Shown here: piece by piece, positions 13,064 through 59,449 of the stretch
How the letters are laid out: the number at the start of each line of letters is the position of its first letter
How positions within the stretch are numbered: the first letter of the stretch is position 1
Virus record (IMG/VR): IMGVR_UViG_3300037882_003354
Location: 1 to 64,000 of that record
Reading direction: 5' to 3' (one strand)
Length of the DNA stretch: 64,000 nt
Program-made: the position numbers and the translations under genes
The notes under the pieces: generated by a model
The model's input: only the letters and a program-made list of their open reading frames with translations
What the model was told of the DNA's origin: nothing
Database searches by the model: none

Positions 13064-13155
13064 GATACAAATTTAAGGTAGAAGTAAGAGAAACTCAATC
13101 AAACATGGCTTTCAGAGAAGGCCACAGAGAGTGGAACGAGGATTTGTTTGCGTGA
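13060..13155 (+). pseudogene. Displaced duplicate of the queD 3' end
   Basis: Encodes MRYKFKVEVRETQSNMAFREGHREWNEDLFA; 13078-13150 matches 11828-11900 with synonymous changes. Confidence 0.85.
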
Positions 13156-15239: not shown

Positions 15240-15422
15240 TTGAACTCAGTACAACAACGCATGGCAGAATTGATGGAGCCCATCAACCGTCAGATTATGA
15301 TGTGTGATTCCACACAAGAAATGCTCATGATTGCCAGTGCCATGATGGTCAGTGCCAAGGAAATTTTCGATAATCATATTGGTGTGCAGGGTCGTAAACA
15401 AATGTTCAAAGATCTGTCATGA
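15240..15422 (+). CDS. Hypothetical protein
   Basis: LNSVQQRMAELMEPI...; coupled to uvsE; start uncertain. Confidence 0.45.
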   Translation: MNSVQQRMAELMEPINRQIMMCDSTQEMLMIASAMMVSAKEIFDNHIGVQGRKQMFKDLS

Positions 15423-18846: not shown

Positions 18847-19230
18847 ATGGGATATCTTTCACGAACTGAAAAAGGCAGCGCACTCAACATAAGTGAGCAC
18901 GATACCAATCTGGAATTGCTGGCCAAGGGTCGGGCACTTGATCCTGTGATCATTACTACTAGCACCACGTTAACAGCCACCCTGCATGAAAGTCGAGAAC
19001 TGTTTTGCAACAGTGACGACCCCATCACACTGACCATTGCGCTGGAAGCCAGCGGCGGCCCCACTGCGCTGGGTGCAAGATTTTTTGGTACCAACATCGG
19101 GGTGGGCGAGGTGACATTGCTGGCTGCTGGCACACTAAATGGCGATGCGCTGCTACCAGCCACCATCAGCCAATGGTCACCATTCGAAGCCATTAGAATT
19201 GACCCAGACATTTATGTGCGGAGAGCATGA
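18847..19230 (+). CDS. Tail-fibre adaptor-like protein
   Basis: N-terminal RTEKGSALN.SEHDTNL fibre-anchor-like motif; ITLTI...GEVTL beta domain. Confidence 0.6.
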   Translation: MGYLSRTEKGSALNISEHDTNLELLAKGRALDPVIITTSTTLTATLHESRELFCNSDDPITLTIALEASGGPTALGARFFGTNIGVGEVTLLAAGTLNGDALLPATISQWSPFEAIRIDPDIYVRRA

Positions 19231-19233
19231 TCC

Positions 19234-22200: not shown

Positions 22201-22566
22201 CCAGTTCAAGATGCAGGTAAAATTGCACCAGAATTATTCCTATATGATGAAAATGGCACCAGTCGTATCTACAATAGTTCTGAGGATTTCAATGTTATTA
22301 TAGTAGACATCATGGACCGAGAACAGGAGCATCTGCAATTGGCAACGTCCAATCCTAGTGCTGAGGCCAACATCGATGCTCTGATAGAAAAATATAACAT
22401 TCTGTTCACAGGTGGCACTGCTTCGCCTGCATATATAGCAGCATTGTCCAGTTTTATTAAAAATACCACCAATTTCAGTCGCAGCACGGTGTCCAGCCAA
22501 AAAAAGGCACTTCAAATGATCATGCACAGTCTGTACATCAGCCCTTATTCAGTAATCAGGACCTAA
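19234..22566 (+). CDS. DUF1800 family protein with beta-repeat insertions, no signal peptide
   Basis: EAARFL, DKLRMRV..ALSE, AFGNY, PDENYAREIMQLYTIGLWEL, HPSTAPY, VTSNPSPGYIARVA, GNLAAVFKAMLLD. Confidence 0.88.
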   Translation: MRSLFFRRSVARAKQAPTLREAARFLRNATLAPSYAEIRALVNNPSGLEATLTSGTNTVVLTAGTTNDLYIGQLLKKTSGTGEFNTDCFVVLISDANTSTFTVSNPHVASGDIVFSGANDFTTDHFSRWIDAQMALSFPRITATQPARSGWDDDFVACRVNPLALGSTDVLLASGNTSLMRVGDYLYYTLGQDNSHLGRFGAGARVASITDNTRFTTTVPHAASGQLEFWHGSGIQQTIRMRETCGVLALNRGNLGRTLNWTQYQEGRRLAEAYRFYLHPDKLRMRVIRALSELYSVGPTILDGAEAARGTDFTDMLSASAFGNYEDLIYNVTKSLIMGRWLNHEGNRKASAASEPDENYAREIMQLYTIGLWELHLNGSRKLASELSPNDSRYIAQPDPGWDAQVPTYGYDDIRAMARILTGYVSASRNQVYYLGNLDDSVTVTMASTTTSHGLLPGDGVYISFPPYDDVRWKATFTNSSTTCTVIDTIGYGSIHGLSANMDILDMDANPDREYTITSVNTLTNTFTVNTASNVTGARVIQQKTPPNTGSYLPTSAIFSVVSTSSDRVFTFDYSTLPIKASNIKTRIKGRGGYAYISSEIIGGIDRGMIIDQDRHEYALPKVALKWITNDPDQIENDAALAGSLYIPSRTISLNATLAANTNTVLLRDVSFRAPGTTNFDVNRVNTTDVLYVGQPLYKISNTGVFGTGTFVTSINSSYEFTVSVNHRTSGNVTFTGTSTGFQATLEQGSNTVVLTPGKGIPQGLYVGQALSKISGTGVFGTGTVVSSIMMGSTTTFQVSVPHETSGVISFQGLNPRTMVGLTDPTLLQNLAEQEVRWAMRALTRHPSTAPYFATRMIRMMVTSNPSPGYIARVASVFRNDGQGVVGNLAAVFKAMLLDQEARAPASKNLIARGTDPHDLGATLVGATRRRPDRLGGRLDGYNRQHGTGTSQYTQAFTYATALNHGVNFGLFTTGSVFGRYPAIYSPAGPVQDAGKIAPELFLYDENGTSRIYNSSEDFNVIIVDIMDREQEHLQLATSNPSAEANIDALIEKYNILFTGGTASPAYIAALSSFIKNTTNFSRSTVSSQKKALQMIMHSLYISPYSVIRT

Positions 22567-22570
22567 TCAA

Positions 22571-24373
22571 ATGGCATTATTACCAGCAGAGTTTACGCAA
22601 GCAATAAAAGCAGTTGACAAGCAAAAGTCAAACAACAAACGTGCCCTGGTGATTGTGTACCTGGGTGGTGGGTCGGATAACTTTAATTTTGTCAGCCCCA
22701 CCACTGGAACCAATCGCGTGAATTACGAAGCCGCTCGTGCAGAAACAAATAGAATTCCTGTTGATGCCACAGGCAATACCCAATTGATGCCCGGCTGGCA
22801 AATGCACCCGCAATGTTTCAAGCCGGTGTTAACTGGGGGATCGTACGCTTACCATTCACCCACCACAACAGTTGTCACATCCAACGCAGTGGCTCAGTTG
22901 ACCTCCAATCTTCGATTGGACACTGGGGATCAGGTGTACATTGATTTTAAAACTGTGAATACTGGAACGATTGCCACTAGCGGGGTGTTCACGGCCACGG
23001 TATTAACTTCCAGTACATTCATAATCGATAGATCGGTGGATGTTGATCAAACAGGTACGGCTGACATCACCATAAGAAAGAACACCTTCATGCGTTTGAT
23101 TGACCAGGGCAAGGCAGCAGTAATCATGAATGTGGGACCCTTGATGGAACCCACCAGTCGGGCAAATGTAGGCGGTGCTTATTATGGCCAACCGGCCTCA
23201 GTAAAATTGCCAGTGCAAATCGCCAGTCATTCAGATCAAAATGCTTTATGGCAGACCGGTGTTGCGCAAAACCCACAGTACACCACCGGTTGGGCAGGTC
23301 GGGCCATGGATTTGTTAAACCCAGTGTACAACTCCACGCTGACCAACGGAGAACCCACGGTGCTATATCCGTCATCCATCTCTTTCAGTGGAGTGGGTGT
23401 GGCATTTCGAGCCAATGATCAACACGCCGCTGGCATGTCCCCCACCGGATTGACCGGTCGCACGGGCAAAATTTTATCTAATGTAGCAAACACTGGTACC
23501 ATCAACTCATTTGGTTCCGGCACCCAGGGACAACTGTTGACTAATTTTAACAATGTGTTGTACACTGACACCACCTCATCCAATGCATTGATTAAAGAAT
23601 ATTTGGCGGCTCAACAGCGAAGTGATGTGGCGACCCAGGTGATATCAGCGGTATTGGCTACAACGAATACATTTAATACTGTACCGAGCGACAGATTTAG
23701 CGCAGGTGAGTCGATATATTCTTCATTAAAAACCACTACTCGATTGATCAAGGGCATGTTTGACACAACACCGTCGAGAGATTTACAACAAAACCGTCAG
23801 ATTTTCTTCATGACGCACGGCGGATTTGACCAACACGATGATTTGATTTTTGACCAAGACAAGCGACTGGCGCCACTCATGTCGGCATTAAGACAATTCT
23901 ATGATGCAACTGTGGATTTGGGCGTGCAAGATAATGTCACCCTGCTGGTGTATAGTGAATTCGGCAGAACATTATTGCAGAACGATGATGGAACTGACCA
24001 TGGTTGGGGAGGGCATGTGCTGGTCATGGGTGGCGCGGTGCAAGGTGTCAATGGAGTGGGCGGTCTCCCAGTATTTGGCACTCCCCCCACCATTGGCACT
24101 CGATCTGATCGATGGGGACCAGACTTCACAAATGATTTCCGAGGGCTACTATTACCATCCATGCCCACTGAAACATTGTATTCAACACTAATACAATGGA
24201 TGGGTATACCGGATGGTTGGTATGATTTGAATGGTGATCCCACAGTCAAGGGCGCACAAAATGCTGTCAACCCTGTGGAAGTAGTGTTACCCAACATGCC
24301 TAACTTTGACACGGCAGTGGACGGGTCGGGCAATCCCAGACTGAGAAAAATCACAGGACTCTTGAGTCCCTAA
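22571..24373 (+). CDS. DUF1501 family protein lacking a Tat signal
   Basis: ALVIVYLGGGSD, NVGPL, SHSDQ..WQ, GWAGR, GGFDQH, SEFGRTL, GTDHGWG. Confidence 0.9.
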   Translation: MALLPAEFTQAIKAVDKQKSNNKRALVIVYLGGGSDNFNFVSPTTGTNRVNYEAARAETNRIPVDATGNTQLMPGWQMHPQCFKPVLTGGSYAYHSPTTTVVTSNAVAQLTSNLRLDTGDQVYIDFKTVNTGTIATSGVFTATVLTSSTFIIDRSVDVDQTGTADITIRKNTFMRLIDQGKAAVIMNVGPLMEPTSRANVGGAYYGQPASVKLPVQIASHSDQNALWQTGVAQNPQYTTGWAGRAMDLLNPVYNSTLTNGEPTVLYPSSISFSGVGVAFRANDQHAAGMSPTGLTGRTGKILSNVANTGTINSFGSGTQGQLLTNFNNVLYTDTTSSNALIKEYLAAQQRSDVATQVISAVLATTNTFNTVPSDRFSAGESIYSSLKTTTRLIKGMFDTTPSRDLQQNRQIFFMTHGGFDQHDDLIFDQDKRLAPLMSALRQFYDATVDLGVQDNVTLLVYSEFGRTLLQNDDGTDHGWGGHVLVMGGAVQGVNGVGGLPVFGTPPTIGTRSDRWGPDFTNDFRGLLLPSMPTETLYSTLIQWMGIPDGWYDLNGDPTVKGAQNAVNPVEVVLPNMPNFDTAVDGSGNPRLRKITGLLSP

Positions 24374-47958: not shown

Positions 47959-48011
47959 GTGTATATTTTAGTTTAAAGCACATTGCCTAGTCAATTAATA
48001 ACCAAGCATTC

Positions 48012-49382
48012 CTATACTAAGAACCCCAAATTAGGTTTCGAGAATCTTCCAATGTTGGGCACGACGGTGGACAAGTCTGAGGCAGGCACGCCAAACCAGG
48101 ATGCGAGGGTGGCCGCATATTCATCCACAGAGGTGGTGGGGATCAATCGACCCTGTCCAGCGTCCTCCGGACTACCTATAGCAACTGTTGGGAAATTACC
48201 GTAGATTCTATTTCCTAGAACTGCACCACCCATAATGAAGTGATGACTACCCCATCCGTGATCTGATCCTTGACCATTGCCCTGCAGGGCACGACCAAAC
48301 TCCGATGCTGTAAAGCTGGTCACACTTTCAGATATGCCCATGGCAACGGTCGCCTGATAGAACGCTGTCATGGCGTCGGAAAGTTCCTTCATTCTGACTG
48401 CATGATCATTTACGAGATTAGCGTGTAAATCGTTACCACCCATGTTAACAAAAAATATCTGTCTCTTTTGCGACAATCCACCTCTGGCACCAATCAAACG
48501 AGCCACCATCCTCAATTGCCTACCAAGATTTGTATCAGGGAATAGTGTACTTGCGGGTACATTAGATAAAGCATTAGTAACCAAGACCTCTGTGGAAATA
48601 GCTCTGGTTGACACTTTATTCAGCTCGTTTTCTAGTAGGCTACTTCGTGGATCCGTGATAAGTTTTCTCATAGCAGGACCAATAGATGGAGCATGATATG
48701 CTCCATTTGCTAAAGCATATACTTTGATCGCACCTCCCACGGAACACTGATACTGGATGGTGTTATTTCCGATTTGCATAGTATTATTACCAGCAACGGA
48801 TATTGCAATAGACACTCCACTGCCTGGATTGAATGCACTGTTGGTTAAGTCTCCGATACGTCCCAACCATCCCGTACTGGAGGCACGGTCTGGCAAGCCA
48901 GTTTGCCAGGCGCGAGTTTGATCTGAGTGGGAGAACAGTTGAAATGGTAGATCTACGCTGCCATTTTTGTACTGTGTTTTTGTTGTTGGAACGCAAAGTG
49001 GCCCAACATTGGCAAGTACGGCGAGATTTTCCTGATCGAATACGGATTTTAGGCCGCCCATCGATCCGTTGAATGCTAGAGTAGGACCATTCCATCCAGA
49101 AGGACTGATCTGCTGGAGACCAGAGACGGGCAGGGCAAGAGCTCCTCTGCCTTTGGCGTAGAGGTCGTACTCTGCCGCGCTGACGGGGACGATGGTGTTT
49201 GACTGATCGTTGCCGCCACCGAGGTAGATGCAAACCAGAGCCTTGTAGTCGCTGGCCTGCTGTGCGCTGGCTGCACCCATGGCAAGCAGGTTGGCCGCGA
49301 ATGGCGTCCCGGCCAGAGCACTAATTTTTGAAAATTTCTGGAGGAATTGACGGCGATTGGCTGCATTGAATGTGTTTGTCAT
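48012..49382 (-). CDS. DUF1501 family protein with a Tat signal
   Basis: NRRQFLQ + hydrophobic + ASA; DYKALVCIYLGGGND, SHSDQ, SEFGR, GSDHGWG, GRLIPTTSVD. Confidence 0.93.
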   Translation of the reverse strand: MTNTFNAANRRQFLQKFSKISALAGTPFAANLLAMGAASAQQASDYKALVCIYLGGGNDQSNTIVPVSAAEYDLYAKGRGALALPVSGLQQISPSGWNGPTLAFNGSMGGLKSVFDQENLAVLANVGPLCVPTTKTQYKNGSVDLPFQLFSHSDQTRAWQTGLPDRASSTGWLGRIGDLTNSAFNPGSGVSIAISVAGNNTMQIGNNTIQYQCSVGGAIKVYALANGAYHAPSIGPAMRKLITDPRSSLLENELNKVSTRAISTEVLVTNALSNVPASTLFPDTNLGRQLRMVARLIGARGGLSQKRQIFFVNMGGNDLHANLVNDHAVRMKELSDAMTAFYQATVAMGISESVTSFTASEFGRALQGNGQGSDHGWGSHHFIMGGAVLGNRIYGNFPTVAIGSPEDAGQGRLIPTTSVDEYAATLASWFGVPASDLSTVVPNIGRFSKPNLGFLV

Positions 49383-49390
49383 GGTGTCTC

Positions 49391-51571
49391 CTATTTTTGT
49401 GTGATAAATTCTGGTGACACCATAGTCAGCAACACAGCAGCGGCAACTCTAGTGTGACCTGAATCCCTAGTTGCCGGAATGGTGTTTATTACATTGATGA
49501 TCGTTTGTTTGGTGGAACTACTCATTCGACCTGCAGTGAGAAGCAAGTTCAAACGATCTACAAGTGCCACTGGGTTCGAGGCTAGGGCCATTTCCACGCT
49601 GTAGTCAGCACCGAGATAGTGATCAACCGAGCCATATTTAATGGCGACGTTATCTCTCCACCAATTGGTTTGCCGTTCCGCTATGTTAGTAATAAAGTTG
49701 TCATAGCCTGTTACTGTGGTTTCATGGGTTATAGCGAACTCCGGTGCTACCAGACCTCTATTCATGATTTCACCTGGTGGTGAATAAGTAGGGCTAAACC
49801 AGTTGAAAACGCTTGGGGCTCTTAGAGGGTTTTGGCCTATGCTTGATACAGGATCTTCGAGATTCCAGATCTTGTAATACCCACTGGTGGCCTTGACATC
49901 AAAGGCGCGCATGAAGTTAGCATATCTGATCATCGGCTCGCGAAGTTTCCCCCACAACGGATCCGACACCTTGGAGGTATCTCGAGCCTCTGGGTCGAGC
50001 AACACGGCCTTGATCACCGCTTTCATGTCACCGCGCACGCCTTGGCCATTGTTGTTGAAGGCTGCTGTCACCCTCGAAACATAGGCTGGGCTCGGATTGC
50101 TGGTGACGAAACGCTTGATCAACTGGCTGCCAATGAAGGGCCCCACGTTGGGGTGGTTGAACAGGGTGTCCAGCGCGATCTTCAGACTTTGCTCTCCAGT
50201 GGTGCCTGCCGGGATGACGACACCCCTGATGATATTCTTTTCACTGGTGCTATGGTACTGTGGGTAATTGATCATTTGCTTACTCCAACTGTTATAGGTC
50301 ACGCTGCTCCAACCATTCCAGTCACTAGCCCAACTCCAGCCCGTGAAAACCTTGGCCATACCCATCACGTCGATCTGGTCGTAGGTGGGTATGTCCTTAC
50401 CATACGCATCTTTTTTTCTTGATCCGTCTGGGTTCAGTTCCCACAGACCTATTGAAAATAACTGCATCATCTCACGTGCAAAATTTTCATCAGGAATTCT
50501 GCCTGTTATTGGATCTTCTTTTATGTTCTTAAAATGAGACAAATAATGGCCCATTGTTGGGTGAGTTGCCACTTGTTCCAGCAGGGTGCGATAATTACCA
50601 AATGCATTACGAGACAGCATATCAAGATAGCTAGCGTGTGCGTCCTTTTGTACCTCTACTGCACTATTGACCGTGCTGACAACGAAGATCTCGCTGAGCG
50701 CAAAGACTAAACGCTGACGCAATTGGTCAGGTCCGACAACAGCTTGTCGCCAGAAACTTTCCATTACTGCGTTGATGTGCTCAGAATTACAAGGGTTGCA
50801 TCCTGGTGGCCCCTTGCGCTCCATCACATAGGTCCAGTGGGTTTCCAGGCTGGGTGTCACAAACTGGTTTTCAATCCACGCGGCCGGGCCGGACTGGGCC
50901 ACCGATGAAATGCTGCTCATGTTGGGACCGAAACTCGCCTGCACGAGAAAGCGCGCCGCTTCAGCTGGAGTTACAGAAGGAGGAGCAGGTGCTGGTTCTG
51001 GCGCAGGTGCTGGAGCAGGTGCTGGAGCAGGTGCTGGAGCAGGTGCTGGAGCAGGTGCTGGAGATGTACCTGGAACAAATCCCACTGGGTAATAACAGGC
51101 TTTTACTGTTCCAACAATTGGGTCTCCAAACACCCAGTTATTACAGCCAACTATAGGTGTTGTGAAGGTCTTGGTGACAAATTTACCAGCAGCACCATAC
51201 GAAATACTAACGGGTGCGCCAGGTGAGCAGATTCCATTTTCAGTAGCACACGGAGTTGTTGAGAATCCTGTGGGAGCTGTAGTTAGCACCGTTACTTCTG
51301 TGTAGCAGGATTTAGTTTTCGTGGTGGTTAAACGACCAAACGTCTGGTCGCTGCAAACGAACGTGGCTTCCCGCATTGACTTCAGGCGAAATTTGCCAGC
51401 AGCTCCGTAAAGTACCCTCGAGGCCTTTGGAAGCGTGCAAGTCTGACCCTCGACCGCGCAGGGGGTAGACGAAAACGTCATGCCTGCAAGCCTGAATGTT
51501 TCCGCAGATACTACTGGTGCCGCGTATCCAGCCAACACCAGAGATAATGTTAAAAGTATTTTAAGTTTCAT
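49391..51571 (-). CDS. Secreted DUF1800 family protein with two Cys-rich N-terminal modules and a PA linker
   Basis: Sec signal; AARFLVQASFG, DQLRQR..FALSEIFVVS, PDENFAREMMQLFSIGL, HPNVGPF, KLREP. Confidence 0.93.
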   Translation of the reverse strand: MKLKILLTLSLVLAGYAAPVVSAETFRLAGMTFSSTPCAVEGQTCTLPKASRVLYGAAGKFRLKSMREATFVCSDQTFGRLTTTKTKSCYTEVTVLTTAPTGFSTTPCATENGICSPGAPVSISYGAAGKFVTKTFTTPIVGCNNWVFGDPIVGTVKACYYPVGFVPGTSPAPAPAPAPAPAPAPAPAPAPEPAPAPPSVTPAEAARFLVQASFGPNMSSISSVAQSGPAAWIENQFVTPSLETHWTYVMERKGPPGCNPCNSEHINAVMESFWRQAVVGPDQLRQRLVFALSEIFVVSTVNSAVEVQKDAHASYLDMLSRNAFGNYRTLLEQVATHPTMGHYLSHFKNIKEDPITGRIPDENFAREMMQLFSIGLWELNPDGSRKKDAYGKDIPTYDQIDVMGMAKVFTGWSWASDWNGWSSVTYNSWSKQMINYPQYHSTSEKNIIRGVVIPAGTTGEQSLKIALDTLFNHPNVGPFIGSQLIKRFVTSNPSPAYVSRVTAAFNNNGQGVRGDMKAVIKAVLLDPEARDTSKVSDPLWGKLREPMIRYANFMRAFDVKATSGYYKIWNLEDPVSSIGQNPLRAPSVFNWFSPTYSPPGEIMNRGLVAPEFAITHETTVTGYDNFITNIAERQTNWWRDNVAIKYGSVDHYLGADYSVEMALASNPVALVDRLNLLLTAGRMSSSTKQTIINVINTIPATRDSGHTRVAAAVLLTMVSPEFITQK

Positions 51572-53122
51572 GATTTAATATCCTTAATAACCAAGCATCT
51601 GATTTCCATCACCCAGATTGTTAGTATGACAATCTCTGCTGCGTTGATTGCAGTTCAACATCCAAGTATTTATCAAACCACTCCAACCATTCCACCAGTC
51701 TCCATGACCACTAAATCCACCAGGAGTTCCCATGGGATAGTTGTCTGAACTCAGTCTCCAGTAGGTGTCAATGCCAGGTTCTTTTACGGGGTAGTAGATA
51801 TTGAAAGCTATCTCAGTAAGAGGTACTGGATGTGTTGCTGGACAGCCAAAAGCAGGATAGGCCATGTGTGCCTTGTGGTCTGGACTGTCTAGATTAACTC
51901 CATCCCAACACTGTGGAAATTGCACACCCATTACCATTGTGCTTCCAACTGGACAATTGGGTATTGACTTGCCACGAGGTGGTGCAGTCATACCAGCGGG
52001 AACACCCTGACACTCATAGGTAACTTTTGACGAAGTGGCAGAATCCACAGCCTTCATGTTACCAGCAATCATTCTTAATCCTACTGGCAGTGGCTGAATT
52101 AAACTAGGTGGAATATAGCTATATCCAGTCTTGTAGTAAATTTGATTGCCCCTTGCCTGGATCGGAGTATTAGTACGAGTATCGATCATGGTGGGAACCC
52201 AATACGAACTACGATTGGCGATACCACCACCACAGGTGGAATTGCCTGTGTTGGTCAGACTGTCAGTGGTACTGAACGCATCTGCTCCGGTATTTCCAAA
52301 GAAGGTGTGGAGATGTGATGCTCCGTTCTGGCCAGGGTATATGATGGGATCGTTAAATCCCATGTGGCTGTAACCACACATCATTCTGAAAGCACCAATG
52401 TTACTAGTGGTAATATCGTCCGTTGCGTGAAATTTCAAACGTAAATCGCTAAAGCCAGAGGCTCTTTTGGGCACTTGATTGATGTCTACAACGGGCATAT
52501 CGCCCATTTTCATGCTGAGATTTTGTGCAGTGCTGGCTGGCGTAAACACCTGGCATTCCTTCAGGTCATTATGCCAATAACCCAAATAACCATGAGAGCA
52601 GGTTCCACCCAGTGTGTCCTGACGATAGAACCACTTGCCGAGTCCATCACCCCAACGGACCATTTTGGTGCCTTCAAATGAGTATGGTTGGTTAAGCAAA
52701 GCAACACGGCTCCAAGTGCCTGGTGGGATATCTGGCAGTACATTATGCGACATCATTGACATGGGTACCTCTGGCATGACAAGTGGTACCACAACAGGTA
52801 ATGCCGCTACTGGAATATAGCAATGCTTTATCTTGCCAGGGGCGGGATCACCACCAAAAGTAGTGTTGTTACAAGTGACAACTTGACCAGCTAGGAAAGT
52901 TTTGATCGTATACGGACCTGCAGGTACCAGATCAAATGCTACAACAGGGCCATATGCAATAATGGTATCAATACTAGGAGTACATTTACGACCCCATTCA
53001 TCACCACAACTAGCAATGGAAAACTCATGACCACCGTAACTAAACGTTGGTTTAACTGGAGCAGGTGCGGGAGCAGGTGCGGGAGCAGGTGCGGGAGCAG
53101 GTGCGGGAGCAGGTGCGGGAGC
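50984..53122 (-). repeat. 12-bp tandem repeats encoding (PA)n linkers at ~50984-51062 and ~53058-53122
   Basis: GGAGCAGGTGCT and GGAGCAGGTGCG arrays on the + strand. Confidence 0.85.
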
Positions 53123-53404
53123 CTCTATATAACAGGCTTTCTCTGATTTTGTTGTAGTCCTACCAAACGTCTTGTCGCTGCAAATGAAGGTACCTACCGG
53201 AATAGACTTCAGGCGAAACCTGCCAGCCACTCCGTAAAGCACCCTAGATTTATACGGAACAGTACATTGTTCACCCTCCACAGCACAAGGTGTAGATAAG
53301 AATGTCATCCCAGCTAACCTGAATGTTTCCGCAGATGCTGCGGGCATCGAGTAAGTCGCTAGCAGCAGAGGGATAGTTGATAAGATTGTTCTTAGTTTCA
53401 TGTT
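51584..53404 (-). CDS. Secreted DUF1996 domain protein
   Basis: DPIIYPG..GASHLHTFFGN, NRSSYWVP, GLRMIAG, FPQCWDGVNLDSPDHKAHMAY, HGDWWNGW. Confidence 0.88.
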   Translation of the reverse strand, partial: NMKLRTILSTIPLLLATYSMPAASAETFRLAGMTFLSTPCAVEGEQCTVPYKSRVLYGVAGRFRLKSIPVGTFICSDKTFGRTTTKSEKACYIEAPAPAPAPAPAPAPAPAPAPAPVKPTFSYGGHEFSIASCGDEWGRKCTPSIDTIIAYGPVVAFDLVPAGPYTIKTFLAGQVVTCNNTTFGGDPAPGKIKHCYIPVAALPVVVPLVMPEVPMSMMSHNVLPDIPPGTWSRVALLNQPYSFEGTKMVRWGDGLGKWFYRQDTLGGTCSHGYLGYWHNDLKECQVFTPASTAQNLSMKMGDMPVVDINQVPKRASGFSDLRLKFHATDDITTSNIGAFRMMCGYSHMGFNDPIIYPGQNGASHLHTFFGNTGADAFSTTDSLTNTGNSTCGGGIANRSSYWVPTMIDTRTNTPIQARGNQIYYKTGYSYIPPSLIQPLPVGLRMIAGNMKAVDSATSSKVTYECQGVPAGMTAPPRGKSIPNCPVGSTMVMGVQFPQCWDGVNLDSPDHKAHMAYPAFGCPATHPVPLTEIAFNIYYPVKEPGIDTYWRLSSDNYPMGTPGGFSGHGDWWNGWSGLINTWMLNCNQRSRDCHTNNLGDGNQMLGY

Positions 53405-53412
53405 AGTCCTCA

Positions 53413-53754
53413 TTAGGGCATGGTCTTTGATACTTCGTTTGAATAAGCACTTTCCATACCAGCACGATCAATGGCAGTCACAGCGAAGTAATATGTATAT
53501 CCTGTGGTGAGACCCACAACGGTATAATTAACCTTTCGAGAATACATACCACTGCCCGACGGCTGGTCATATGTGCCTGGTTTTGTTCCGTAGTACACAC
53601 GGTATCCACTGATTGCTTCAGCAGGTGCCACCCAGGTCAATGCAGCAGTATTAGGCGCATGGGGTCGTCGACGATGAGCATGGCTGGGGTCAGTGACCAT
53701 CAAACTGGTACTGACCAAAACCAGGCTTGCCATCAATCGTGTCCAGGATCTCAA
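53413..53754 (-). CDS. Secreted fibronectin type III protein
   Basis: LTW...GYRVYYG...YTVVGL..G.TYYFAVTA.D..G.ES.YSNEV. Confidence 0.85.
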   Translation of the reverse strand: MRSWTRLMASLVLVSTSLMVTDPSHAHRRRPHAPNTAALTWVAPAEAISGYRVYYGTKPGTYDQPSGSGMYSRKVNYTVVGLTTGYTYYFAVTAIDRAGMESAYSNEVSKTMP

Positions 53755-54002
53755 GGTGTGCTCTTGTTAACCACAGGATGGGACCGCAGGTGATGCTTTA
53801 ATTCGTTGTACCCACCAATCAACTGATCGCCCAGAAAAATTTGTGGCACTGAGCGTGCACCGGGTACCAGTTCCAAGAGTTCCTCTCGTGTGTGCCCACG
53901 ACCAATCACTCGCTCGTCAAATGGTATACCATGCTGTTCGAGTAAAAATTTAGCTTGGTCGCAAAAAACACATTGTTCTCGACTGTAAATTACGGCTTTC
54001 AT
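53751..54002 (-). CDS. Glutaredoxin
   Basis: CVFC, RSVPQIF, IGGY. Confidence 0.9.
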   Translation of the reverse strand: MKAVIYSREQCVFCDQAKFLLEQHGIPFDERVIGRGHTREELLELVPGARSVPQIFLGDQLIGGYNELKHHLRSHPVVNKSTP

Positions 54003-54017
54003 TTGTATTCCTTAAAG

Positions 54018-55106
54018 TCATAGATCCGGCAATTGGGCAAGATCAATTTCTGAACTCATGGCTCCGATGACATATGATGTACTTTCTGTTTCCTGCAGAG
54101 CCGATTGTTTTTTCCCCAGATTCAAATGTTTGTTAAACCAGGGAATGGGGCTGGATTTGGGATATTCCTCAGTGTATTTAATACCAATATCTTTCAGGCG
54201 AGTAAAAGCGGTATAGTCCACAAAGTCTTTGAGAATGGCGGCATTGAGACCGATCACAGGTCCTTTCTTGAACAAATAGTCAGCCCAGGCCTTTTCTTCT
54301 TGAATAACTTCCATGTACATAGCATATACTTCTTCACGGCATTCTTCAACTAAATTGGCAAAATCTTCATCATCTTTGGTGACATTGTTGATCAACCAGG
54401 CGGTCCATTCTGCATGCAGAATTTCGTCCTGCAAGATCAAACTGATGATGTTGCCATTACCAATGTAGATCTTGTTTTCCACCATGGCCAGGCTGGTGGC
54501 AAAGCTCACCATGAATCGGAAGGCTTCCAGTGCATAACTTGCATGCAGTGCCAGCCAGATGGCCCGTTTGTGATCATGCATGGAGATGTCTTGTCCCATG
54601 GCCCGGCGGCAGTTGAGATCGTGTAGTGCATCGTAATAACGGCCAATGTTGGCGGCCATGTCCACGATTTCCTTGGTGTCATGAATCTTGTTGAATTCTT
54701 CCTTGGGCACCGAGTACACGTTGCGAATGATGTGGCTGTAACTCTTGCTGTGGATGTTGGTCTCAAACATGCTCCAGATGAGCACCAGTGATTCCAGTTC
54801 TGGTATGCTGATCACTGGACTGAAGATCTGTACAGGTGCACGACCCTGAATGCTGTCCAGGGCAGTCTGTCGCAGCAGGTTGCTGGTGAAGATGTGTTTG
54901 ATGGCAGGTGTGGCATCCTTGTGATCCATCTTGTCCTTGGTCAGGCTGATTTCTTCGGGCACCCAGAAAAATCCTCGTTGTAATTCTTCGTACTTGGCAA
55001 TCTTGGGTTGACGGAATTCTTCATATCGTTGTACTGTGACCTCACCGTCCAGAAACATTTTACGCTTGAGGTAATTGGTGGGTTTAGATATATCGTAAGT
55101 GCTCAT
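54018..55106 (-). CDS. nrdB: Class Ia ribonucleotide reductase beta subunit
   Basis: FFWVPEE, LDSIQGR, ETNIHSKSY, LEAFRF, DEILH, QETE. Confidence 0.96.
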   Translation of the reverse strand: MSTYDISKPTNYLKRKMFLDGEVTVQRYEEFRQPKIAKYEELQRGFFWVPEEISLTKDKMDHKDATPAIKHIFTSNLLRQTALDSIQGRAPVQIFSPVISIPELESLVLIWSMFETNIHSKSYSHIIRNVYSVPKEEFNKIHDTKEIVDMAANIGRYYDALHDLNCRRAMGQDISMHDHKRAIWLALHASYALEAFRFMVSFATSLAMVENKIYIGNGNIISLILQDEILHAEWTAWLINNVTKDDEDFANLVEECREEVYAMYMEVIQEEKAWADYLFKKGPVIGLNAAILKDFVDYTAFTRLKDIGIKYTEEYPKSSPIPWFNKHLNLGKKQSALQETESTSYVIGAMSSEIDLAQLPDL

Positions 55107-55810: not shown

Positions 55811-56461
55811 TTAGTATTTCCCGCTGGCTAAAATGATCTTGCAAATATGTGATAGGCGTTCAATATGCTCATAAGCACGCCAGGGGCTGGTGTCAATGGC
55901 CACAACTCCGTGCCCTTTAATACCAACTATGTCGTAGGCAATGTTGCCATTTTTATCCAACTGTAGATTTTCGTGGCAACGATCAGCAAGCTCTTGGCTG
56001 ATGGGAGGCACATCTCCCACGTTGGGAGCCACCCTGGTATAGCGATTGAGTTCTGGAAATGCACGACTGATGGTGCTCAAATCAATACCGGCATGCATGG
56101 CCGCAATACAGTAAGTGGGGTGAACATGCACCACCACCCTGACATCCTTTGCATATTGCCCCAATTCCCTTTGCAGTCCAAAGTGCAAGGGTAGTTCTCC
56201 ACTGGGCCGTAGATTTTTACTGATTTCAGTGTACTCCAGCTCCCTGCAGGAATAATGCAATCGAGGCGGCTGGTCGTAGAAACCCTGCTCAATGCCAATC
56301 TTCTTGAACTGATCAGGTTGTAGCGTTTGCTTGCGAACACCGCTGGGAGTAATGTAAAAGTGATCACGGTCGTGATGTCGTATGCTCACATTACCATCAC
56401 GGCTGGTGATCCAATTACGCTTGTATGCGTCTACTAATATATCACATATGGTTTCTAACAT
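55811..56461 (-). CDS. Class II aldolase/adducin family protein
   Basis: DGNVSIR, ITPSG, PSGELPLH, VVHVHP, GHGVVA. Confidence 0.88.
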   Translation of the reverse strand: MLETICDILVDAYKRNWITSRDGNVSIRHHDRDHFYITPSGVRKQTLQPDQFKKIGIEQGFYDQPPRLHYSCRELEYTEISKNLRPSGELPLHFGLQRELGQYAKDVRVVVHVHPTYCIAAMHAGIDLSTISRAFPELNRYTRVAPNVGDVPPISQELADRCHENLQLDKNGNIAYDIVGIKGHGVVAIDTSPWRAYEHIERLSHICKIILASGKY

Positions 56462-56479
56462 TAGAGTTTGTATAATTGT

Positions 56480-57109
56480 TTATGATATGCAATTTAATAA
56501 CTGCTCTTTTGACCAAAGACACATTTCTCGCTTGGGGTGCGGCCACATGGTATCATCAAATCTATACAATGGTTCAGGAAAGTTGTAGGGAGCGGCAAAC
56601 AGATTTAACAAATCAAAATGACCGTTAGGAATGCTGCGGTTTTCGCTCCACATAAATCCATCGTAGTTTATAGTATTAAAGTTATGTGAAGTAGTCAGTA
56701 TATACTTTACATCCGACTTTTTAAAGTTTAATAGCACTTTTTTAATATTTTCAGGCGTCAGGTGAAACAGTATATCTCTAACAATCCAAAGATCAGCAGA
56801 AGGAATAGGGTCTTCAGTTATATCTAAATGTACAAATGATCTTCCGCCCACATCTTTAAAGTTTTCGTTATGTCTATCAATTAGTCCTCTGACTATATCC
56901 CCACCTGTATATTTTATGTTAGGTTGGCCTTTTAGCAATGGGGTCATCCATACCATATCCCCACACGGTGCATCTAATACAGTTTTGATATCAAACTGGT
57001 CAAATATTACTGGTAGATTTTGACAAACGTTTAACGTATATTCAATAGTGGACCCTGGTCCACTTGATTCTATGTATCCTTGAAAAATCTGTTCTAATTC
57101 TTGATTCAT
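56480..57109 (-). CDS. Class I SAM-dependent methyltransferase
   Basis: SGPGS, VLDAPCGD..WM, YTGGDIV, RDILFHL; AT-rich. Confidence 0.8.
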   Translation of the reverse strand: MNQELEQIFQGYIESSGPGSTIEYTLNVCQNLPVIFDQFDIKTVLDAPCGDMVWMTPLLKGQPNIKYTGGDIVRGLIDRHNENFKDVGGRSFVHLDITEDPIPSADLWIVRDILFHLTPENIKKVLLNFKKSDVKYILTTSHNFNTINYDGFMWSENRSIPNGHFDLLNLFAAPYNFPEPLYRFDDTMWPHPKREMCLWSKEQLLNCIS

Positions 57110-57127: not shown

Positions 57128-59449
57128 TTATAATTTACAGGCGTCACAATCCGACTCATCATTTGCTGTAACTGGTTCAGATTCTGATGTATTCTTTGTG
57201 GTGGTTAAAACATGTTTAGAGTCGGTTTTAGAAAGAAGACTATAGTACATGGTTTTTAGCCCCCACTTGTAAGCCAACATGAGATTTCTGGCAATCAGAG
57301 TGCCTGGAACCTTGCCGTCTGCGAAGTGTTTGGGTGAATAGAACGTGTTGGTGCTCAGGCTCTGATCAATGTATGCAGCCAGCACAGCAGCAGTCTTCAG
57401 ATATCCCACGCAGTCTGTCTGATCCCACATGAGTTGGTATTTGTTCTTTAACTTCCGATATTCCGGAACAACCTGTACAAAACTACCAGCCTTGGATTCC
57501 TTGACTGAAATTAATTCCATGGGCATCTCAATGCCATTGGTGCTGTTCAATACTACGCTGGAACTTTCAACTGGAGCCACGGCCATCAATGTAGCATTAC
57601 GAATGCCATGCTGTTTCATTCGTGCTCGCAAGGGTTCCCAGTCCAGGCTGGGTGTGAAGTCGGTGAGTTCGTTGACTCCAGCGGCCCGTCGCTCCCAGGG
57701 AAATACTCCACGCCCGTAGTAAGTGTACTGACTGCGCTGGCATGACCCACGTTCCTGGGCCAGTTCCACACTGGCTTCGGTCAGGTAATAGGCCTGATGC
57801 TCCATCCAACGACGAACTTCTGCCAGTGCTTCAGGTGCACCGTACTTGAGACCACGCTTGGCATGCCAGTAGGCCAGATTGGTGATGCCCACGCCCAGGG
57901 GCTCAAAATCTTGATTGGCCAGTCGACTCTGAATGGACAGGAAATCCTGATAGTTCAACAAGTTGCTCAGGCTGCGCACCAGCACACGGCAGGCCTTGCG
58001 CATTTGTTGAGGGTTGGTAAACGACCCCCAATTCACACTGCCCAAAGTGCACAGGGCGATCCGGCCCTTAGGGTCTTCAATACGCTGAAATGGTCTGGTG
58101 GGAAGAAGTATTTCCTGGCAGAGGTTGCTCTGGTAGATGGGATCAGTGGTGGCATCAAATGGGCCTTGATTGATCACATTGTCAATGTTCACCAGATAGA
58201 TACGGCCAGTATCAGTCCGTTCTTTAAGAATACCGTTCTTGAAGATTTCTGCTGCTGGCAGTACTTTTTTCTTGATGTCTGTTCTGGCTTCGTATGCCAC
58301 ATACAGTTTTTCAAATTCGGCTGAATCACGATAGTATGCTTCGTACAAGTCAGGCACTTGATGCGGGTCAAACAATGTGATGTCGCCGCTATGCTTGTAT
58401 CGACGCCAGAACATGGCACTGACCACCACTGAGTAATCCATCTGACGCACACGAGTTTCGTCAGTGCCCTGATTGTTCTTGAGCACAATTAGATCTTCGA
58501 ATTGGTAGTGCCAGATGGGAAATGTCACCGTGCAACTGGCGTTGCGAATGCCACCCTGACTGCAACTGCGTAGATCACTGAACCACTTCTTCAAGAAGGG
58601 TATCATGCCCGTGTGTTTGATCTCTCCGTTGCGAATTGGGGCACCTAATGGGCGTAAACGGCCGATTTCCAGGCCGATTCCGGCTCGTTTGCTTGCATAT
58701 TTTGCCATCATTTCACCACTGGCAAAGATACTGTCCAGAGTATCGTCGCTGGTGATCAGCACACAACTGCTAAACTGCTTGGTGGTGGTGCCCAGGCCTG
58801 CCAGCACAGGGGTGGCCAGAGTAAAGTGCCCATCGCTGGCACATTCATAATATTCCTTGACCAATTTCAATCTGCTGTCCCGGGGCTCTGCATGAAAGGC
58901 AGTGGCAGCAGCCATGGCATATCTCACCTGCGGAGTTTCATAGATCTGTCCAGTGGCGCGATTTTGCACCAGGTATTTTTCTGATAGTTGTGCGATGGCA
59001 GCGTAGGTGTAAGTTTCATCTTTGTCATGATCAATGAACAGATCAATGATGTCCCATTCTGCTTCAGTGTACCAATCCAGCAGTTCGGGCGTGTACATGC
59101 CAGCCTCTACGTTTTTCTTCACAATGCTGTAAAGATTTGGTGGAGTGTATCCGCCGTACACCTCCTTGCGCAACATGCTGATGCGCTGTCTGCCGGCCAC
59201 ATACTGATAGTTGACATTGTTGATTTCTGGATTCTCTGACTCATCGATCAGATTGACCATGGCCTTGAGCAACAGCTCGTCAATGGTCTTGGTGGTCATG
59301 CCATCATGTATTTCGATCTGAGCTTTGATCTCAATCATGCTGGGGCTTACACCGTCTATACCACAGCAGGCGTTGGCCACCTGTCTTTGTATTTTACTAA
59401 TATCCAGTGGGACTCGTCCACCGTCACGCTTAACTACTGTAATTGTCAT
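57128..59449 (-). CDS. nrdA: Class Ia ribonucleotide reductase alpha subunit
   Basis: ATP cone VVKRDG; SSC; SNLCQE; AVAPVESSS; KTMYY; C-terminal CDAC. Confidence 0.97.
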   Translation of the reverse strand: MTITVVKRDGGRVPLDISKIQRQVANACCGIDGVSPSMIEIKAQIEIHDGMTTKTIDELLLKAMVNLIDESENPEINNVNYQYVAGRQRISMLRKEVYGGYTPPNLYSIVKKNVEAGMYTPELLDWYTEAEWDIIDLFIDHDKDETYTYAAIAQLSEKYLVQNRATGQIYETPQVRYAMAAATAFHAEPRDSRLKLVKEYYECASDGHFTLATPVLAGLGTTTKQFSSCVLITSDDTLDSIFASGEMMAKYASKRAGIGLEIGRLRPLGAPIRNGEIKHTGMIPFLKKWFSDLRSCSQGGIRNASCTVTFPIWHYQFEDLIVLKNNQGTDETRVRQMDYSVVVSAMFWRRYKHSGDITLFDPHQVPDLYEAYYRDSAEFEKLYVAYEARTDIKKKVLPAAEIFKNGILKERTDTGRIYLVNIDNVINQGPFDATTDPIYQSNLCQEILLPTRPFQRIEDPKGRIALCTLGSVNWGSFTNPQQMRKACRVLVRSLSNLLNYQDFLSIQSRLANQDFEPLGVGITNLAYWHAKRGLKYGAPEALAEVRRWMEHQAYYLTEASVELAQERGSCQRSQYTYYGRGVFPWERRAAGVNELTDFTPSLDWEPLRARMKQHGIRNATLMAVAPVESSSVVLNSTNGIEMPMELISVKESKAGSFVQVVPEYRKLKNKYQLMWDQTDCVGYLKTAAVLAAYIDQSLSTNTFYSPKHFADGKVPGTLIARNLMLAYKWGLKTMYYSLLSKTDSKHVLTTTKNTSESEPVTANDESDCDACKL

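What the first reader, a model, noticed from the sequence alone, without database searches (positions are those of the whole stretch)
48012..53754. Second, exported FN3-DUF1996-DUF1800-DUF1501 operon downstream of RNR
Seen: four tightly packed genes, all with export signals (three Sec-like, one Tat), coupled to glutaredoxin. One phage thus carries two divergent DUF1800/DUF1501 pairs in contrasting formats: secreted by the infected cell versus located among structural genes. Inference: repeated capture implies a selected role in infection, such as envelope or polysaccharide modification or nutrient scavenging, with DUF1996 as a third partner.
Basis: partly seen in the sequence, partly recalled or inferred. 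Interest (0 to 1): 0.75.

Follow-up and report, generated by a model that had tools for sequence, protein, structure and literature searches.

The report
Phage-borne exported polysaccharide-locus enzymes
A 322-kb freshwater jumbo phage carries four tightly packed exported genes (FN3, DUF1996, DUF1800, DUF1501) whose closest bacterial relatives sit in one variable slot of Burkholderiales exopolysaccharide gene clusters, so the phage most likely cuts or remodels its host's slime layer with enzyme families nobody has characterised.

Summary
On the minus strand, RNR small subunit and glutaredoxin are followed by FN3 (53413-53754), DUF1996 (51584-53413), DUF1800 (49391-51571) and DUF1501 (48012-49382). 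Spacing is -4 to +12 nt. By eye there are three Sec-type leaders and one twin-arginine leader.

The genes are not a chimera. GC and GC3 match the phage rather than the bacterial homologues. dN/dS is 0.09-0.23, and near-identical metagenome contigs span four junctions.

The two DUF1800/DUF1501 pairs have independent origins (AU p 1e-45 and 1e-84).
- Pair b nests in a freshwater Burkholderiales clade. There it sits right after epsI in an exopolysaccharide (EPS) locus, on six independent contigs.
- DUF1996 fills the same slot in closely related loci. It was never found next to DUF1800/DUF1501 in the roughly 90 bacterial loci examined. It is an alternative cassette, not a third partner.
- Pair a has no signal peptides. 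It belongs to a phage lineage that recurs in structural modules of at least 10 other viral contigs.

DUF1800b and DUF1501b are predicted to form a heterodimer (0.93 against controls at or below 0.01), with the invariant motifs of both proteins at the interface. DUF1996 and DUF1800 have no fold relatives in the PDB.

Best reading: exported, polysaccharide-targeted enzymes acting on host EPS. The chemistry is unknown.

The parts
54018..55106 (-). Ribonucleotide reductase small subunit (upstream context, same strand)
   Evidence: Pfam Ribonuc_red_sm, 131.6 bits
53751..54002 (-). Glutaredoxin. Its TGA stop overlaps the TTG start of the FN3 gene (TTGA).
   Evidence: Pfam Glutaredoxin, 56 bits; sequence read
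53413..53754 (-). Small exported FN3 protein (113 aa). Sec-type leader with cleavage after SHA. An alternative ATG start lies at residue 8.
   Evidence: Pfam fn3, 37.6 bits; translation; no close relatives in IMG/VR
51584..53413 (-). Exported DUF1996 protein (609 aa). Leader residues 1-28 (53330-53413). 4-Cys CBM-like module 1 at residues 29-97 (53123-53329). Pro-Ala linker. Second module at about residues 122-200. DUF1996 catalytic domain at residues 355-577 (51683-52351).
   Evidence: Model pLDDT 94. No PDB fold relative. dN/dS 0.17-0.23 against phage relatives.
49391..51571 (-). Exported DUF1800 protein b (726 aa). Leader residues 1-23 (51503-51571). Cys modules at residues 24-92 (51296-51502) and 103-163 (51083-51265). 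Pro-Ala linker. DUF1800 domain at 49403-50953, with the invariant PDENFAREMMQ motif starting at residue 363.
   Evidence: 76-82% identical to bacterial L034 and L170. Model pLDDT 87.
48012..49382 (-). Tat-exported DUF1501 protein b (456 aa). Twin-arginine leader at residues 1-40 (49263-49382). Conserved GGGND55-59, SHSDQ151, GGNDLH315, SEFGR360, GSDHGWG372.
   Evidence: 76-78% identical to bacterial homologues. Predicted heterodimer with DUF1800b.
47984..48008 (-). Terminator-like hairpin 4 nt after the DUF1501b stop; likely end of the transcription unit
   Evidence: 10 pairs. The scan overall is not enriched over shuffles, so this is weak evidence.
18847..19230 (+). Small ORF (127 aa) preceding pair a. 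Homologous to the 115-aa ORF that precedes the pair in other phages.
   Evidence: BLASTP 38% identity, E 2e-12 against L131; also found in L134 and L135
19234..22566 (+). DUF1800 protein a (1110 aa). No leader. Four copies of a ~75-aa beta-rich repeat (residues 41-125, 163-229, 654-739, 740-818). PDENYARE motif retained.
   Evidence: Groups with phage DUF1800s L133-L135.
22571..24373 (+). DUF1501 protein a (600 aa). No Tat leader. Insertions present. All conserved motifs retained.
   Evidence: Falls in the signal-less clade with P0241-P0249.

Best explanation
The operon is a host-derived, exported polysaccharide-processing module kept by a freshwater jumbo phage, probably of Burkholderiales.

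Shown:
- Four co-directional, translationally packed genes sit behind RNR and glutaredoxin. Each carries an export leader.
- DUF1996 and DUF1800b start their mature chains with the same ~65-aa four-cysteine module (ETFRLAGMTF..., 71% identical) followed by Pro-Ala linkers.
- Pair b branches inside a Burkholderiales clade whose members lie directly after epsI in an exosortase-type EPS locus. That locus runs Bac_transf, OM beta-barrel-like protein, epimerase, ManC, Ugd, EpsI | slot | glycosyltransferases, Wzx, pyruvyl transferase, WecG.
- In closely related loci the same slot holds DUF1996 plus a PA14 protein instead.
- The phage copies are under purifying selection and have phage-like composition.

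Predicted:
- DUF1800b and DUF1501b form a tight heterodimer. The invariant PDENxARExxQ helix of DUF1800 packs onto the conserved Asp/His/Ser cluster of DUF1501. The pair would then be one two-subunit enzyme with a composite or gated active site.

Inferred:
- After Sec export (FN3, DUF1996, DUF1800b) and Tat export (DUF1501b), the proteins meet in the periplasm of the infected cell. The Cys modules tether them to a glycan.
- The two catalytic units cleave or strip substituents from host EPS or capsule. Each is the locus-specific processing enzyme of one EPS type.
- The benefit to the phage would be to stop or thin the slime layer, so progeny are not trapped and neighbouring cells become accessible after lysis. 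Alternatively it alters the surface glycan used as receptor.
- Pair a has no leaders, sits in the tail-fibre module and belongs to a phage-only lineage. It would be the virion-borne counterpart used at adsorption.
For: Anatomy and export leaders.

Shared module. Its nearest ESM Atlas cluster scores 0.93. That cluster's predicted fold recurs appended to GH16, GH78 rhamnosidase, GH5 cellulase and DUF1800 proteins.

EPS-locus context of the closest DUF1800/DUF1501 homologues:
- L031, 72-75%
- L120, 68%
- L122, 64%
- L170, 82%/78%, and L171, 62-66%
- L034, 76%, with the L170-type GT1 downstream

DUF1996 in the same slot: L116, Piscinibacter, and L166. L166's flanking EPS genes are 82-97% identical to L031's, and its DUF1996 also carries the Cys module.

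Phylogeny. AU tests.

Heterodimer: ipSAE 0.93 against a best control of 0.01. That mark was reached by 58 of 80 solved complexes and 2 of 110 mismatched pairs. The interface holds DUF1800 model residues 162-176 and DUF1501 residues S151/H152, D318/H320 and D374/H375 (invariant columns).

Domain fusions pointing to carbohydrate substrates:
- DUF1996 with F5/8-C, CBM6/35, CBM96, WSC, CBM1, and the fungal secretome note in PMC7679414
- DUF1501 with dockerin, F5/8-C, T9SS tail, PKD
- The pair is co-transferred with bacterial chitin-synthase operons (PMC5122149)

Selection: dN/dS 0.09-0.23.

Composition: phage copies have GC 0.47-0.50 and GC3 0.40-0.49, against 0.54-0.59 and 0.61-0.70 in the bacterial homologues.

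Pair a in structural modules of other phages.
Against: - No enzymatic activity is known for any of the three DUF families.
- DUF1996 and DUF1800 have no fold relatives in the PDB, so no chemistry can be assigned.
- Outside the closest clade, the DUF1800/DUF1501 pair has no conserved neighbours and no EPS markers in its flanks. The EPS link may therefore be clade-specific.
- One of three close bacterial DUF1996 homologues is not in an EPS locus (L167). Three more distant ones showed no EPS markers.
- DUF1996 lies beside PhoH in two other phage groups. That could point to phosphate stress instead.
- Alkaline-phosphatase-superfamily membership of DUF1501 could not be confirmed here.
- Signal peptides were judged by eye. 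The host is inferred only from gene phylogeny. Expression was not shown.
Confidence: 0.55

Rival explanations
1. Nutrient (phosphate) scavenging. DUF1501 would be a Tat-exported metallo-phosphatase or phosphodiesterase, analogous to Tat-exported PhoX and PhoD. DUF1996 would be another periplasmic hydrolase. The phage would boost phosphorus supply for its large genome, which would fit the placement beside nucleotide-metabolism genes.
For: - Twin-arginine leader.
- Conserved Asp/His/Ser motifs that resemble alkaline-phosphatase-superfamily metal sites. The Pfam clan assignment is from my own knowledge.
- The operon lies behind RNR and Grx.
- DUF1996 is adjacent to PhoH in L006 and L020.
- DUF1996 relatives sit in nucleotide-metabolism regions of related phages.
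Against: - No pho-regulon or transporter neighbours recur in the bacterial loci surveyed.
- The closest homologues of both enzyme types sit in EPS loci.
- CBM-like modules and CBM fusions point to polymeric glycans.
- Similarity to the sulfatase/AP profile is weak.
- PhoH adjacency may simply reflect clustering of accessory genes.
Confidence: 0.15
2. Surface-receptor remodelling for superinfection exclusion. The exported enzymes would not degrade bulk EPS. They would modify the surface glycan (EPS, capsule or LPS) that this or competing phages use as receptor, much as seroconverting phages do.
For: It rests on the same context evidence as the main explanation. The phage also carries a virion-module version (pair a) that could recognise the same glycan. 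The enzymes are exported to the compartment where glycans are assembled.
Against: - Nothing distinguishes modification from depolymerisation.
- A lytic jumbo phage gains less from exclusion than a temperate one. No integrase was looked for.
- Known seroconversion enzymes are inner-membrane glycosyl- or acetyl-transferases, not soluble exported proteins (my own knowledge).
Confidence: 0.2
3. Artefact or passenger. The block would be bacterial DNA misassembled into the phage contig, or a recently captured, decaying moron without function.
For: - Very high similarity (76-82%) to bacterial genes.
- No close relative of the DUF1800/DUF1501 genes in IMG/VR.
- No listed run spans the whole 6-kb stretch.
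Against: - GC and GC3 of all four genes equal the phage's and differ from the bacterial homologues.
- dS is about 1 or more with dN/dS 0.09-0.15.
- Every invariant residue of the three families is kept.
- Start and stop codons overlap with the phage's Grx gene.
- Contigs with 0-4 differences span four junctions, though run X2 may be the source sample.
- Related phages carry DUF1996 with the same module.
- The genome has terminal repeats.
Confidence: 0.03

Closest known systems
Bacterial DUF1800-DUF1501 two-gene operons (e.g. those co-transferred with bacterial chitin synthase genes, PMC5122149)
   Same: Same two Pfam families and the same order (DUF1800 then DUF1501). The Tat motif is on DUF1501, and the operon sits next to polysaccharide-synthesis genes. 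Pair b is a phylogenetic member of a Burkholderiales subclade.
   Different: It is encoded by a phage, joined to FN3 and DUF1996, and placed behind RNR/Grx. Its composition has been ameliorated to the phage's. Most bacterial DUF1800s are lipoproteins (LAACGGG), whereas this subclade has a cleavable leader plus Cys modules.
Periplasmic or exported processing enzymes encoded inside EPS loci (AlgL, PslG, BcsZ, PelA; my own knowledge)
   Same: An exported enzyme encoded inside the biosynthetic locus of the polymer it acts on. It lies in a strain-variable region and carries carbohydrate-binding modules.
   Different: There is no sequence or fold relationship. DUF1996 and DUF1800 match nothing in the PDB. 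Activity is unproven.
Phage tailspike and soluble capsule/EPS depolymerases
   Same: The proposed job is the same: removing host surface polysaccharide. Pair a lies in a tail-fibre/baseplate module as depolymerases do. Carrying several specificities in one phage is common.
   Different: Known depolymerases are mostly trimeric beta-helix lyases or hydrolases without export leaders, released by lysis. Here the folds differ, the enzyme is a predicted heterodimer, and the second copy is exported by Sec/Tat from the living infected cell.
Phage auxiliary genes whose products are exported, e.g. cyanophage PstS (my own knowledge)
   Same: A host-derived gene with a leader peptide, working in the periplasm of the infected cell.
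   Different: The substrate class differs (glycan rather than phosphate). It is a four-gene module and includes a Tat substrate.
Fungal DUF1996 proteins (PMC4738358, PMC7679414)
   Same: [quoted passage not shown] Frequently fused to carbohydrate-binding modules and secreted.
   Different: The phage and bacterial versions carry a different, 4-Cys module. Some fungal members are reported as vacuolar stress proteins.

Membership tests
Pfam DUF1996 (PF09362) | [quoted passage not shown] | tested here: met
   154.3 bits against a cut-off of 27. NDPIIYPG and HGDWWNGW are present. All 49 invariant columns of a 50-sequence alignment are kept.
Pfam DUF1800 (PF08811) | HMM score above the cut-off; conserved PDENxARE motif; gene directly upstream of a DUF1501 gene | tested here: met
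   309.4 bits (pair b) and 155.7 bits (pair a) against a cut-off of 26.1. Motif at residues 363 and 359. Adjacency holds in every bacterial locus where the upstream flank was available.
Pfam DUF1501 (PF07394) | HMM score above the cut-off; N-terminal twin-arginine leader | tested here: met
   Pair b: 103.7 bits and NRRQFL. Pair a: 80 bits, but the Tat leader is absent. Pair a therefore meets the domain criterion only.
Alkaline-phosphatase/sulfatase superfamily (for DUF1501) | Detectable profile or fold similarity to AP-superfamily enzymes, with the metal-binding Asp / nucleophile / DxH / DH motifs | tested here: inconclusive
   The motifs GGGxD, SHSDQ, GGxDxH and xDHGWG are conserved. A profile search of the PDB found nothing. 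Pfam listed no weak AP-family hits. hhalign against a home-made and rough sulfatase alignment gave only E 0.045 over 43 columns.
Sec / Tat signal peptides | Positive n-region, hydrophobic h-region, AxA-type cleavage site; for Tat, S/T-R-R-x-F-L-K | tested here: met
   Manual reading. All four have n/h/c regions ending in SHA, ASA, VSA and ASA. DUF1501b has RRQFLQK. No predictor (SignalP, TatP) was available.
Phage tailspike depolymerases (beta-helix type) | Right-handed parallel beta-helix catalytic domain | tested here: not met
   The DUF1996 model is a mixed beta fold with no PDB match (best Foldseek E 0.02; VIA-align Z 2.5). DUF1800 is all-alpha.
Host-derived auxiliary gene of a phage | The gene nests within a cellular clade on a tree, lies in a bona fide phage genome and is under purifying selection | tested here: met
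   Pair b is sister to bacterial L034/P0005 inside a Burkholderiales clade (99-100 SH-aLRT). The genome has terminal repeats and is rated complete. dN/dS is 0.09-0.15.
Exosortase/EpsI-type EPS locus accessory cassette | Located in the slot directly after epsI, between the conserved sugar-nucleotide genes and the variable glycosyltransferases | tested here: met
   This holds for the bacterial homologues, not for the phage copy itself. DUF1800/DUF1501: L031, L120, L122, L171, plus L170 and L034 in part. DUF1996: L116 and L166.

The most novel reading that the evidence does not exclude
DUF1996 and the DUF1800/DUF1501 heterodimer would be two previously unrecognised classes of polysaccharide-active enzymes with new folds. 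Bacteria would use them as interchangeable, serotype-specific processing enzymes of exosortase-type EPS loci. Phages would have recruited them twice: once as a virion-borne, signal-less three-gene cassette in tail modules (a new kind of phage depolymerase), and once as Sec/Tat-exported enzymes that dismantle the slime layer from inside the infected cell.
Probability: 0.35. Interest if true: 0.8.

Novelty: new variant of a known kind. Interest (0 to 1): 0.62.

Why it matters
Three large, widespread domains of unknown function gain a concrete, testable functional context: the variable slot next to epsI in EPS loci. The DUF1800/DUF1501 pair also gains a structural hypothesis, an obligate heterodimer with a composite site.

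For phage biology the locus suggests two things. One is an unrecognised family of virion-associated enzymes, with signal-less pairs found in at least 10 viral contigs and none matched in PHROGs. The other is an unusual strategy: exporting host-type glycan-processing enzymes through Sec and Tat during infection.

If the activities are confirmed, they would add new enzyme classes for degrading bacterial exopolysaccharides and biofilms.

Tried and rejected
- **Nucleotide and protein searches of GenBank phages.** These found only low-complexity hits to the Pro-Ala linker and two remote DUF1800 hits.
- **PHROGs.** No family matched any of the DUF proteins.
- **Single-protein scans of IMG/VR** with DUF1800b, DUF1501b, DUF1501a and FN3. 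No close relatives were found. Only an alignment-based scan found the phage pairs.
- **Sequence and profile searches of the PDB.** Nothing was found for any of the proteins.
- **Fold searches.** Foldseek and VIA-align on DUF1996 and DUF1800 gave no meaningful matches. AlphaFold DB clusters returned only other DUF1800s.
- **Test of DUF1501 against sulfatases by hhalign.** The result was inconclusive. The template alignment was rough and included some wrong-strand ORFs.
- **A general EPS link for the whole DUF1800/DUF1501 family.** Rejected. Most of the 80 genome loci have no EPS markers and no conserved neighbour at all.
- **DUF1996 as a regular neighbour of the pair.** Rejected.
- **Within-phage duplication of the pair.** Rejected.
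- **Chimera or decay.** Rejected.
- **Promoter and terminator scan.** Counts did not exceed shuffles.
- **Literature.** No paper assigns a function to the pair or reports it in phages.

Full report
**1. What is there**

The window is the first 64 kb of a 322,512-bp viral record with direct terminal repeats, rated complete. On the minus strand a long co-directional block runs as follows:
- RNR large subunit (57128-59449)
- a methyltransferase, a class II aldolase and an unknown ORF
- RNR small subunit (54018-55106)
- glutaredoxin (53751-54002)
- the four genes of the finding: FN3 (53413-53754), DUF1996 (51584-53413), DUF1800 (49391-51571) and DUF1501 (48012-49382)

All four Pfam matches are far above their gathering scores. 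The junctions are -4 nt (TTGA, Grx stop/FN3 start), -1 nt (TAATG), +12 and +8 nt. A 10-bp hairpin follows the last stop, although the terminator scan is not enriched over shuffles.

Each product begins with an export leader, read directly from the translations. Three have the Sec n/h/c pattern, ending in SHA, ASA and VSA. DUF1501 carries NRRQFLQK followed by a hydrophobic stretch ending in ASA, a twin-arginine leader. No signal-peptide predictor was available, so this is manual.

The second pair sits at 19234-22566 and 22571-24373, among He_PIG, collagen-repeat and Mtd_N tail-fibre-like genes. It lacks leaders.

**2. A shared targeting module**

Mature DUF1996 and mature DUF1800b both start with ETFRLAGMTF and share a ~65-aa four-cysteine module that is 71% identical. 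DUF1800b has a second copy and DUF1996 at least one more. Pro-Ala linkers follow, and the module occurs nowhere else in the genome.

The nearest ESM Atlas cluster scores 0.93 with 212 shared features. It is an uncharacterised ~70-aa domain. Its predicted fold recurs appended to GH16, GH78 rhamnosidase and GH5 cellulase proteins, S8 peptidases and DUF1800 proteins. This is a lead, not a proof, that the module binds carbohydrate.

**3. Not an artefact, not decaying**
- GC and GC3 of the four genes (0.47-0.50 and 0.40-0.49) match the phage genome (GC 0.479). The closest bacterial homologues have 0.54-0.59 and 0.61-0.70.
- Pairwise dN/dS is 0.09-0.15 for DUF1800b and DUF1501b against the bacterial contig L034, 0.17-0.23 for DUF1996 against three phage relatives, and 0.13-0.15 for DUF1501a against L118. 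dS is near 1 for the comparisons with the bacterial L034 and for pair a, and 0.55-1.16 for DUF1996 against its phage relatives; where it approaches 1 the ratios are approximate but far from 1.
- Freshwater metagenome contigs with 0-4 differences span the junctions at 47958/48012, 49382/49391, 53413 and 53751. That run may be the source sample, so this is weak independent support.
- Every invariant column of the three family alignments is kept in the phage copies.

**4. Where the genes came from**

DUF1501b has thousands of bacterial homologues. The best are 76-78% identical, and the best in GTDB genomes (60-65%) are freshwater Burkholderiales MAGs such as Rhodoferax and Hydrogenophaga.

In all bacterial loci DUF1800 directly precedes DUF1501. 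In the closest subclade, DUF1800 carries the same Cys module and Pro-Ala linker.

The DUF1501 and DUF1800 trees agree:
- Pair b is sister to the bacterial contig L034 inside this Burkholderiales subclade (SH-aLRT 99-100).
- Pair a falls in a separate, deep clade.
- AU tests reject a sister relationship of a and b (p 1e-45 and 1e-84).

The two pairs are therefore independent acquisitions, not a duplication.

**5. Genomic context of the closest bacterial homologues**

On six independent contigs (L031, L120, L122, L171, and in part L170 and L034), the pair lies in one particular place. That place is directly after a divergently oriented epsI gene of an exosortase-type EPS locus. Upstream are the priming transferase (Bac_transf), an outer-membrane beta-barrel-like protein, an epimerase, ManC and UDP-glucose dehydrogenase. 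Downstream is a variable set of glycosyltransferases, Wzx, a pyruvyl transferase and WecG.

DUF1996 homologues are 50-55% identical in Burkholderiales. They are rare, found in 3 of 301 sampled genomes of the order. Two of the three close homologues whose context I could read sit in exactly the same slot of the same locus:
- Piscinibacter sp. XHJ-5, with DUF1996-PA14-DUF1996
- Burkholderiales bacterium 28-67-8, with DUF1996 followed by a PA14-like protein

The conserved EPS genes of the second are 82-97% identical to those of L031. Near-relatives therefore differ in whether the slot holds DUF1996 or DUF1800/DUF1501. The bacterial DUF1996 also carries the Cys module.

The DUF1996 catalytic domain was never found within the flanks of any DUF1800/DUF1501 locus. 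The two enzyme sets behave as alternative, strain-variable cassettes of one EPS locus. The phage is, so far, the only place where they are combined.

Caveats:
- Outside the closest subclade the pair has no conserved neighbours and no EPS markers.
- One close DUF1996 homologue (Aquabacterium) is elsewhere in its genome.

**6. DUF1996 in the phage lineage**

Related viral contigs encode full-length DUF1996 with the module (74-89% identical) but no DUF1800/DUF1501 within 8-10 kb. The gene lies among nucleotide-metabolism and replication genes, twice next to PhoH. Twenty-one further IMG/VR contigs carry the catalytic domain at ~40% identity.

One contig from a 2015 viral metagenome is ~92% identical. 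It joins position 51332 to 53160, fusing the DUF1996 leader and first module to the second module of DUF1800b. It therefore lacks the DUF1996 body. This rests on a single low-depth contig.

DUF1996 is probably the older resident. The DUF1800/DUF1501 pair was added beside it, and the repeated module is a recombination substrate.

**7. What the proteins look like**

The DUF1996 domain folds confidently (pLDDT 94). It is a mixed, mostly beta structure with many conserved His, Asp and Cys residues. It matches nothing in the PDB (Foldseek best E 0.02; VIA-align best Z 2.5) or Swiss-Prot. Across the ESM Atlas the same fold is fused to F5/8 type C, CBM6/CBM35, CBM96, WSC and CBM1 modules. A fungal secretome study also noted the CBM/WSC fusions and proposed a role in polysaccharide degradation (PMC7679414).

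The DUF1800 domain (pLDDT 87) is all-alpha and also has no PDB relative. AlphaFold DB returns only DUF1800s, with Ig, IPT and DUF4214 fusions.

DUF1501 elsewhere is fused to dockerin, F5/8 type C, PKD and T9SS sorting tails. Its conserved GGGxD, SHSDQ, GGxDxH and xDHGWG motifs resemble an alkaline-phosphatase-superfamily metal site. I could not confirm that relationship.

**8. The pair as one enzyme**

Co-folding the DUF1800b domain with mature DUF1501b gave ipSAE 0.93 in all three runs, against 0.00-0.01 for three controls. That mark was reached by 58 of 80 solved complexes and 2 of 110 mismatched pairs, and the counts hold only roughly because my own alignments were used.

There are about 210 contacts. 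They include the invariant PDENxARExxQ segment of DUF1800 and the conserved S151/H152, D318/H320 and D374/H375 of DUF1501.

The model supports binding but does not show it. It does explain the strict gene adjacency, and it suggests a composite or gated active site.

**9. Pair a belongs to a phage lineage**

An exhaustive HMMER search with DUF1501a found a 74%-identical relative and a clade of signal-less DUF1501s. Contexts of this clade:
- L131: Phage_base_V, gp25, Baseplate_J, a 1615-aa fibre, a 115-aa ORF, DUF1800, DUF1501, then a tail fibre.
- Eight IMG/VR contigs hold adjacent DUF1800/DUF1501 and a ninth a lone DUF1501 at its contig edge; the four whose neighbours were annotated lie in head, neck or tail modules.
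- The small upstream ORF is conserved, including in this window at 18847-19230.

DUF1800a additionally carries four copies of a ~75-aa beta-rich repeat. None of these proteins matches a PHROG.

**10. Explanation and rivals**

The best-supported reading is that the operon encodes exported, glycan-tethered enzymes that process the host's exopolysaccharide. It combines two alternative locus-specific cassettes. Pair a would be the virion-borne analogue.

Shown:
- gene anatomy and leaders (by eye)
- origin of the pairs
- purifying selection
- genomic context of the closest homologues

Predicted:
- the DUF1800b/DUF1501b heterodimer

Inferred:
- the substrate
- the benefit to the phage

Rivals are phosphate scavenging (Tat leader, AP-like motifs, PhoH adjacency), receptor remodelling for exclusion, and artefact or passenger. 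The last is largely refuted.

**11. Novelty**

I found no paper that assigns a function to DUF1800/DUF1501 or reports the pair in phages. Phage polysaccharide-active enzymes and exported auxiliary proteins are known kinds. The enzyme families, the heterodimer, the Sec/Tat-exported format and the recurrent signal-less tail-module cassette are new variants of them.

Noticed in passing
window 18847-24373; loci L131, L133-L140, L118, L119, L130, L132: A signal-less cassette (small ORF, DUF1800, DUF1501) recurs in baseplate, tail-fibre or head-neck modules of at least 10 other viral contigs. No PHROG family matches it. It may be an unrecognised virion enzyme family.
   Followed up: partly
window 51332-53160 (run X3): A ~92%-identical contig from a 2015 viral metagenome joins the first Cys module of DUF1996 to DUF1800b, deleting the DUF1996 body. 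This suggests recombination between the repeated modules. It rests on a single contig at depth ~4.
   Followed up: no
L006:2179-2886, L020:5908-6723; own genome G000:C1:285868-286629: In two other phage groups DUF1996 lies directly beside a PhoH-like gene. This phage has PhoH about 230 kb away.
   Followed up: partly
window 19354-19608, 19720-19920, 21193-21444, 21451-21687: DUF1800a contains four copies of a ~75-aa beta-rich repeat (LYxGQxLxKxSGTGxFGTGT...). The repeat is found nowhere else in the genome. In L119 an ORF downstream of the pair resembles this N-terminal repeat region.
   Followed up: partly
window 50974-51063: The Pro-Ala linker coding repeat gives spurious nucleotide hits to unrelated phages (Microviridae, Vibrio phages). 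It also produces a depth spike (about 110x in X1) when metagenome contigs are laid on it.
   Followed up: no
window 13131-14330 and 15419-16453: The phage encodes a DAO-family FAD oxidoreductase and a UvdE UV-damage endonuclease just upstream of the structural block.
   Followed up: no
window 55811-57109: A class II aldolase-like gene and a methyltransferase sit between the RNR large and small subunit genes.
   Followed up: no
L036-L115: Most bacterial DUF1800 proteins have a lipobox (…LAACGGGG…) and are probably lipoproteins. The subclade closest to the phage instead has a cleavable leader plus Cys modules.
   Followed up: no
L034:592-7494: In the closest bacterial contig the pair lies just downstream of a 2300-aa RTX-repeat protein and type I secretion genes.
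   Followed up: no
run X11: Contigs from a freshwater-sediment RNA library match parts of DUF1800b and DUF1501b at 90-99% identity. Whether they come from this phage, a relative or bacteria, and whether they are transcripts at all, is unresolved.
   Followed up: no
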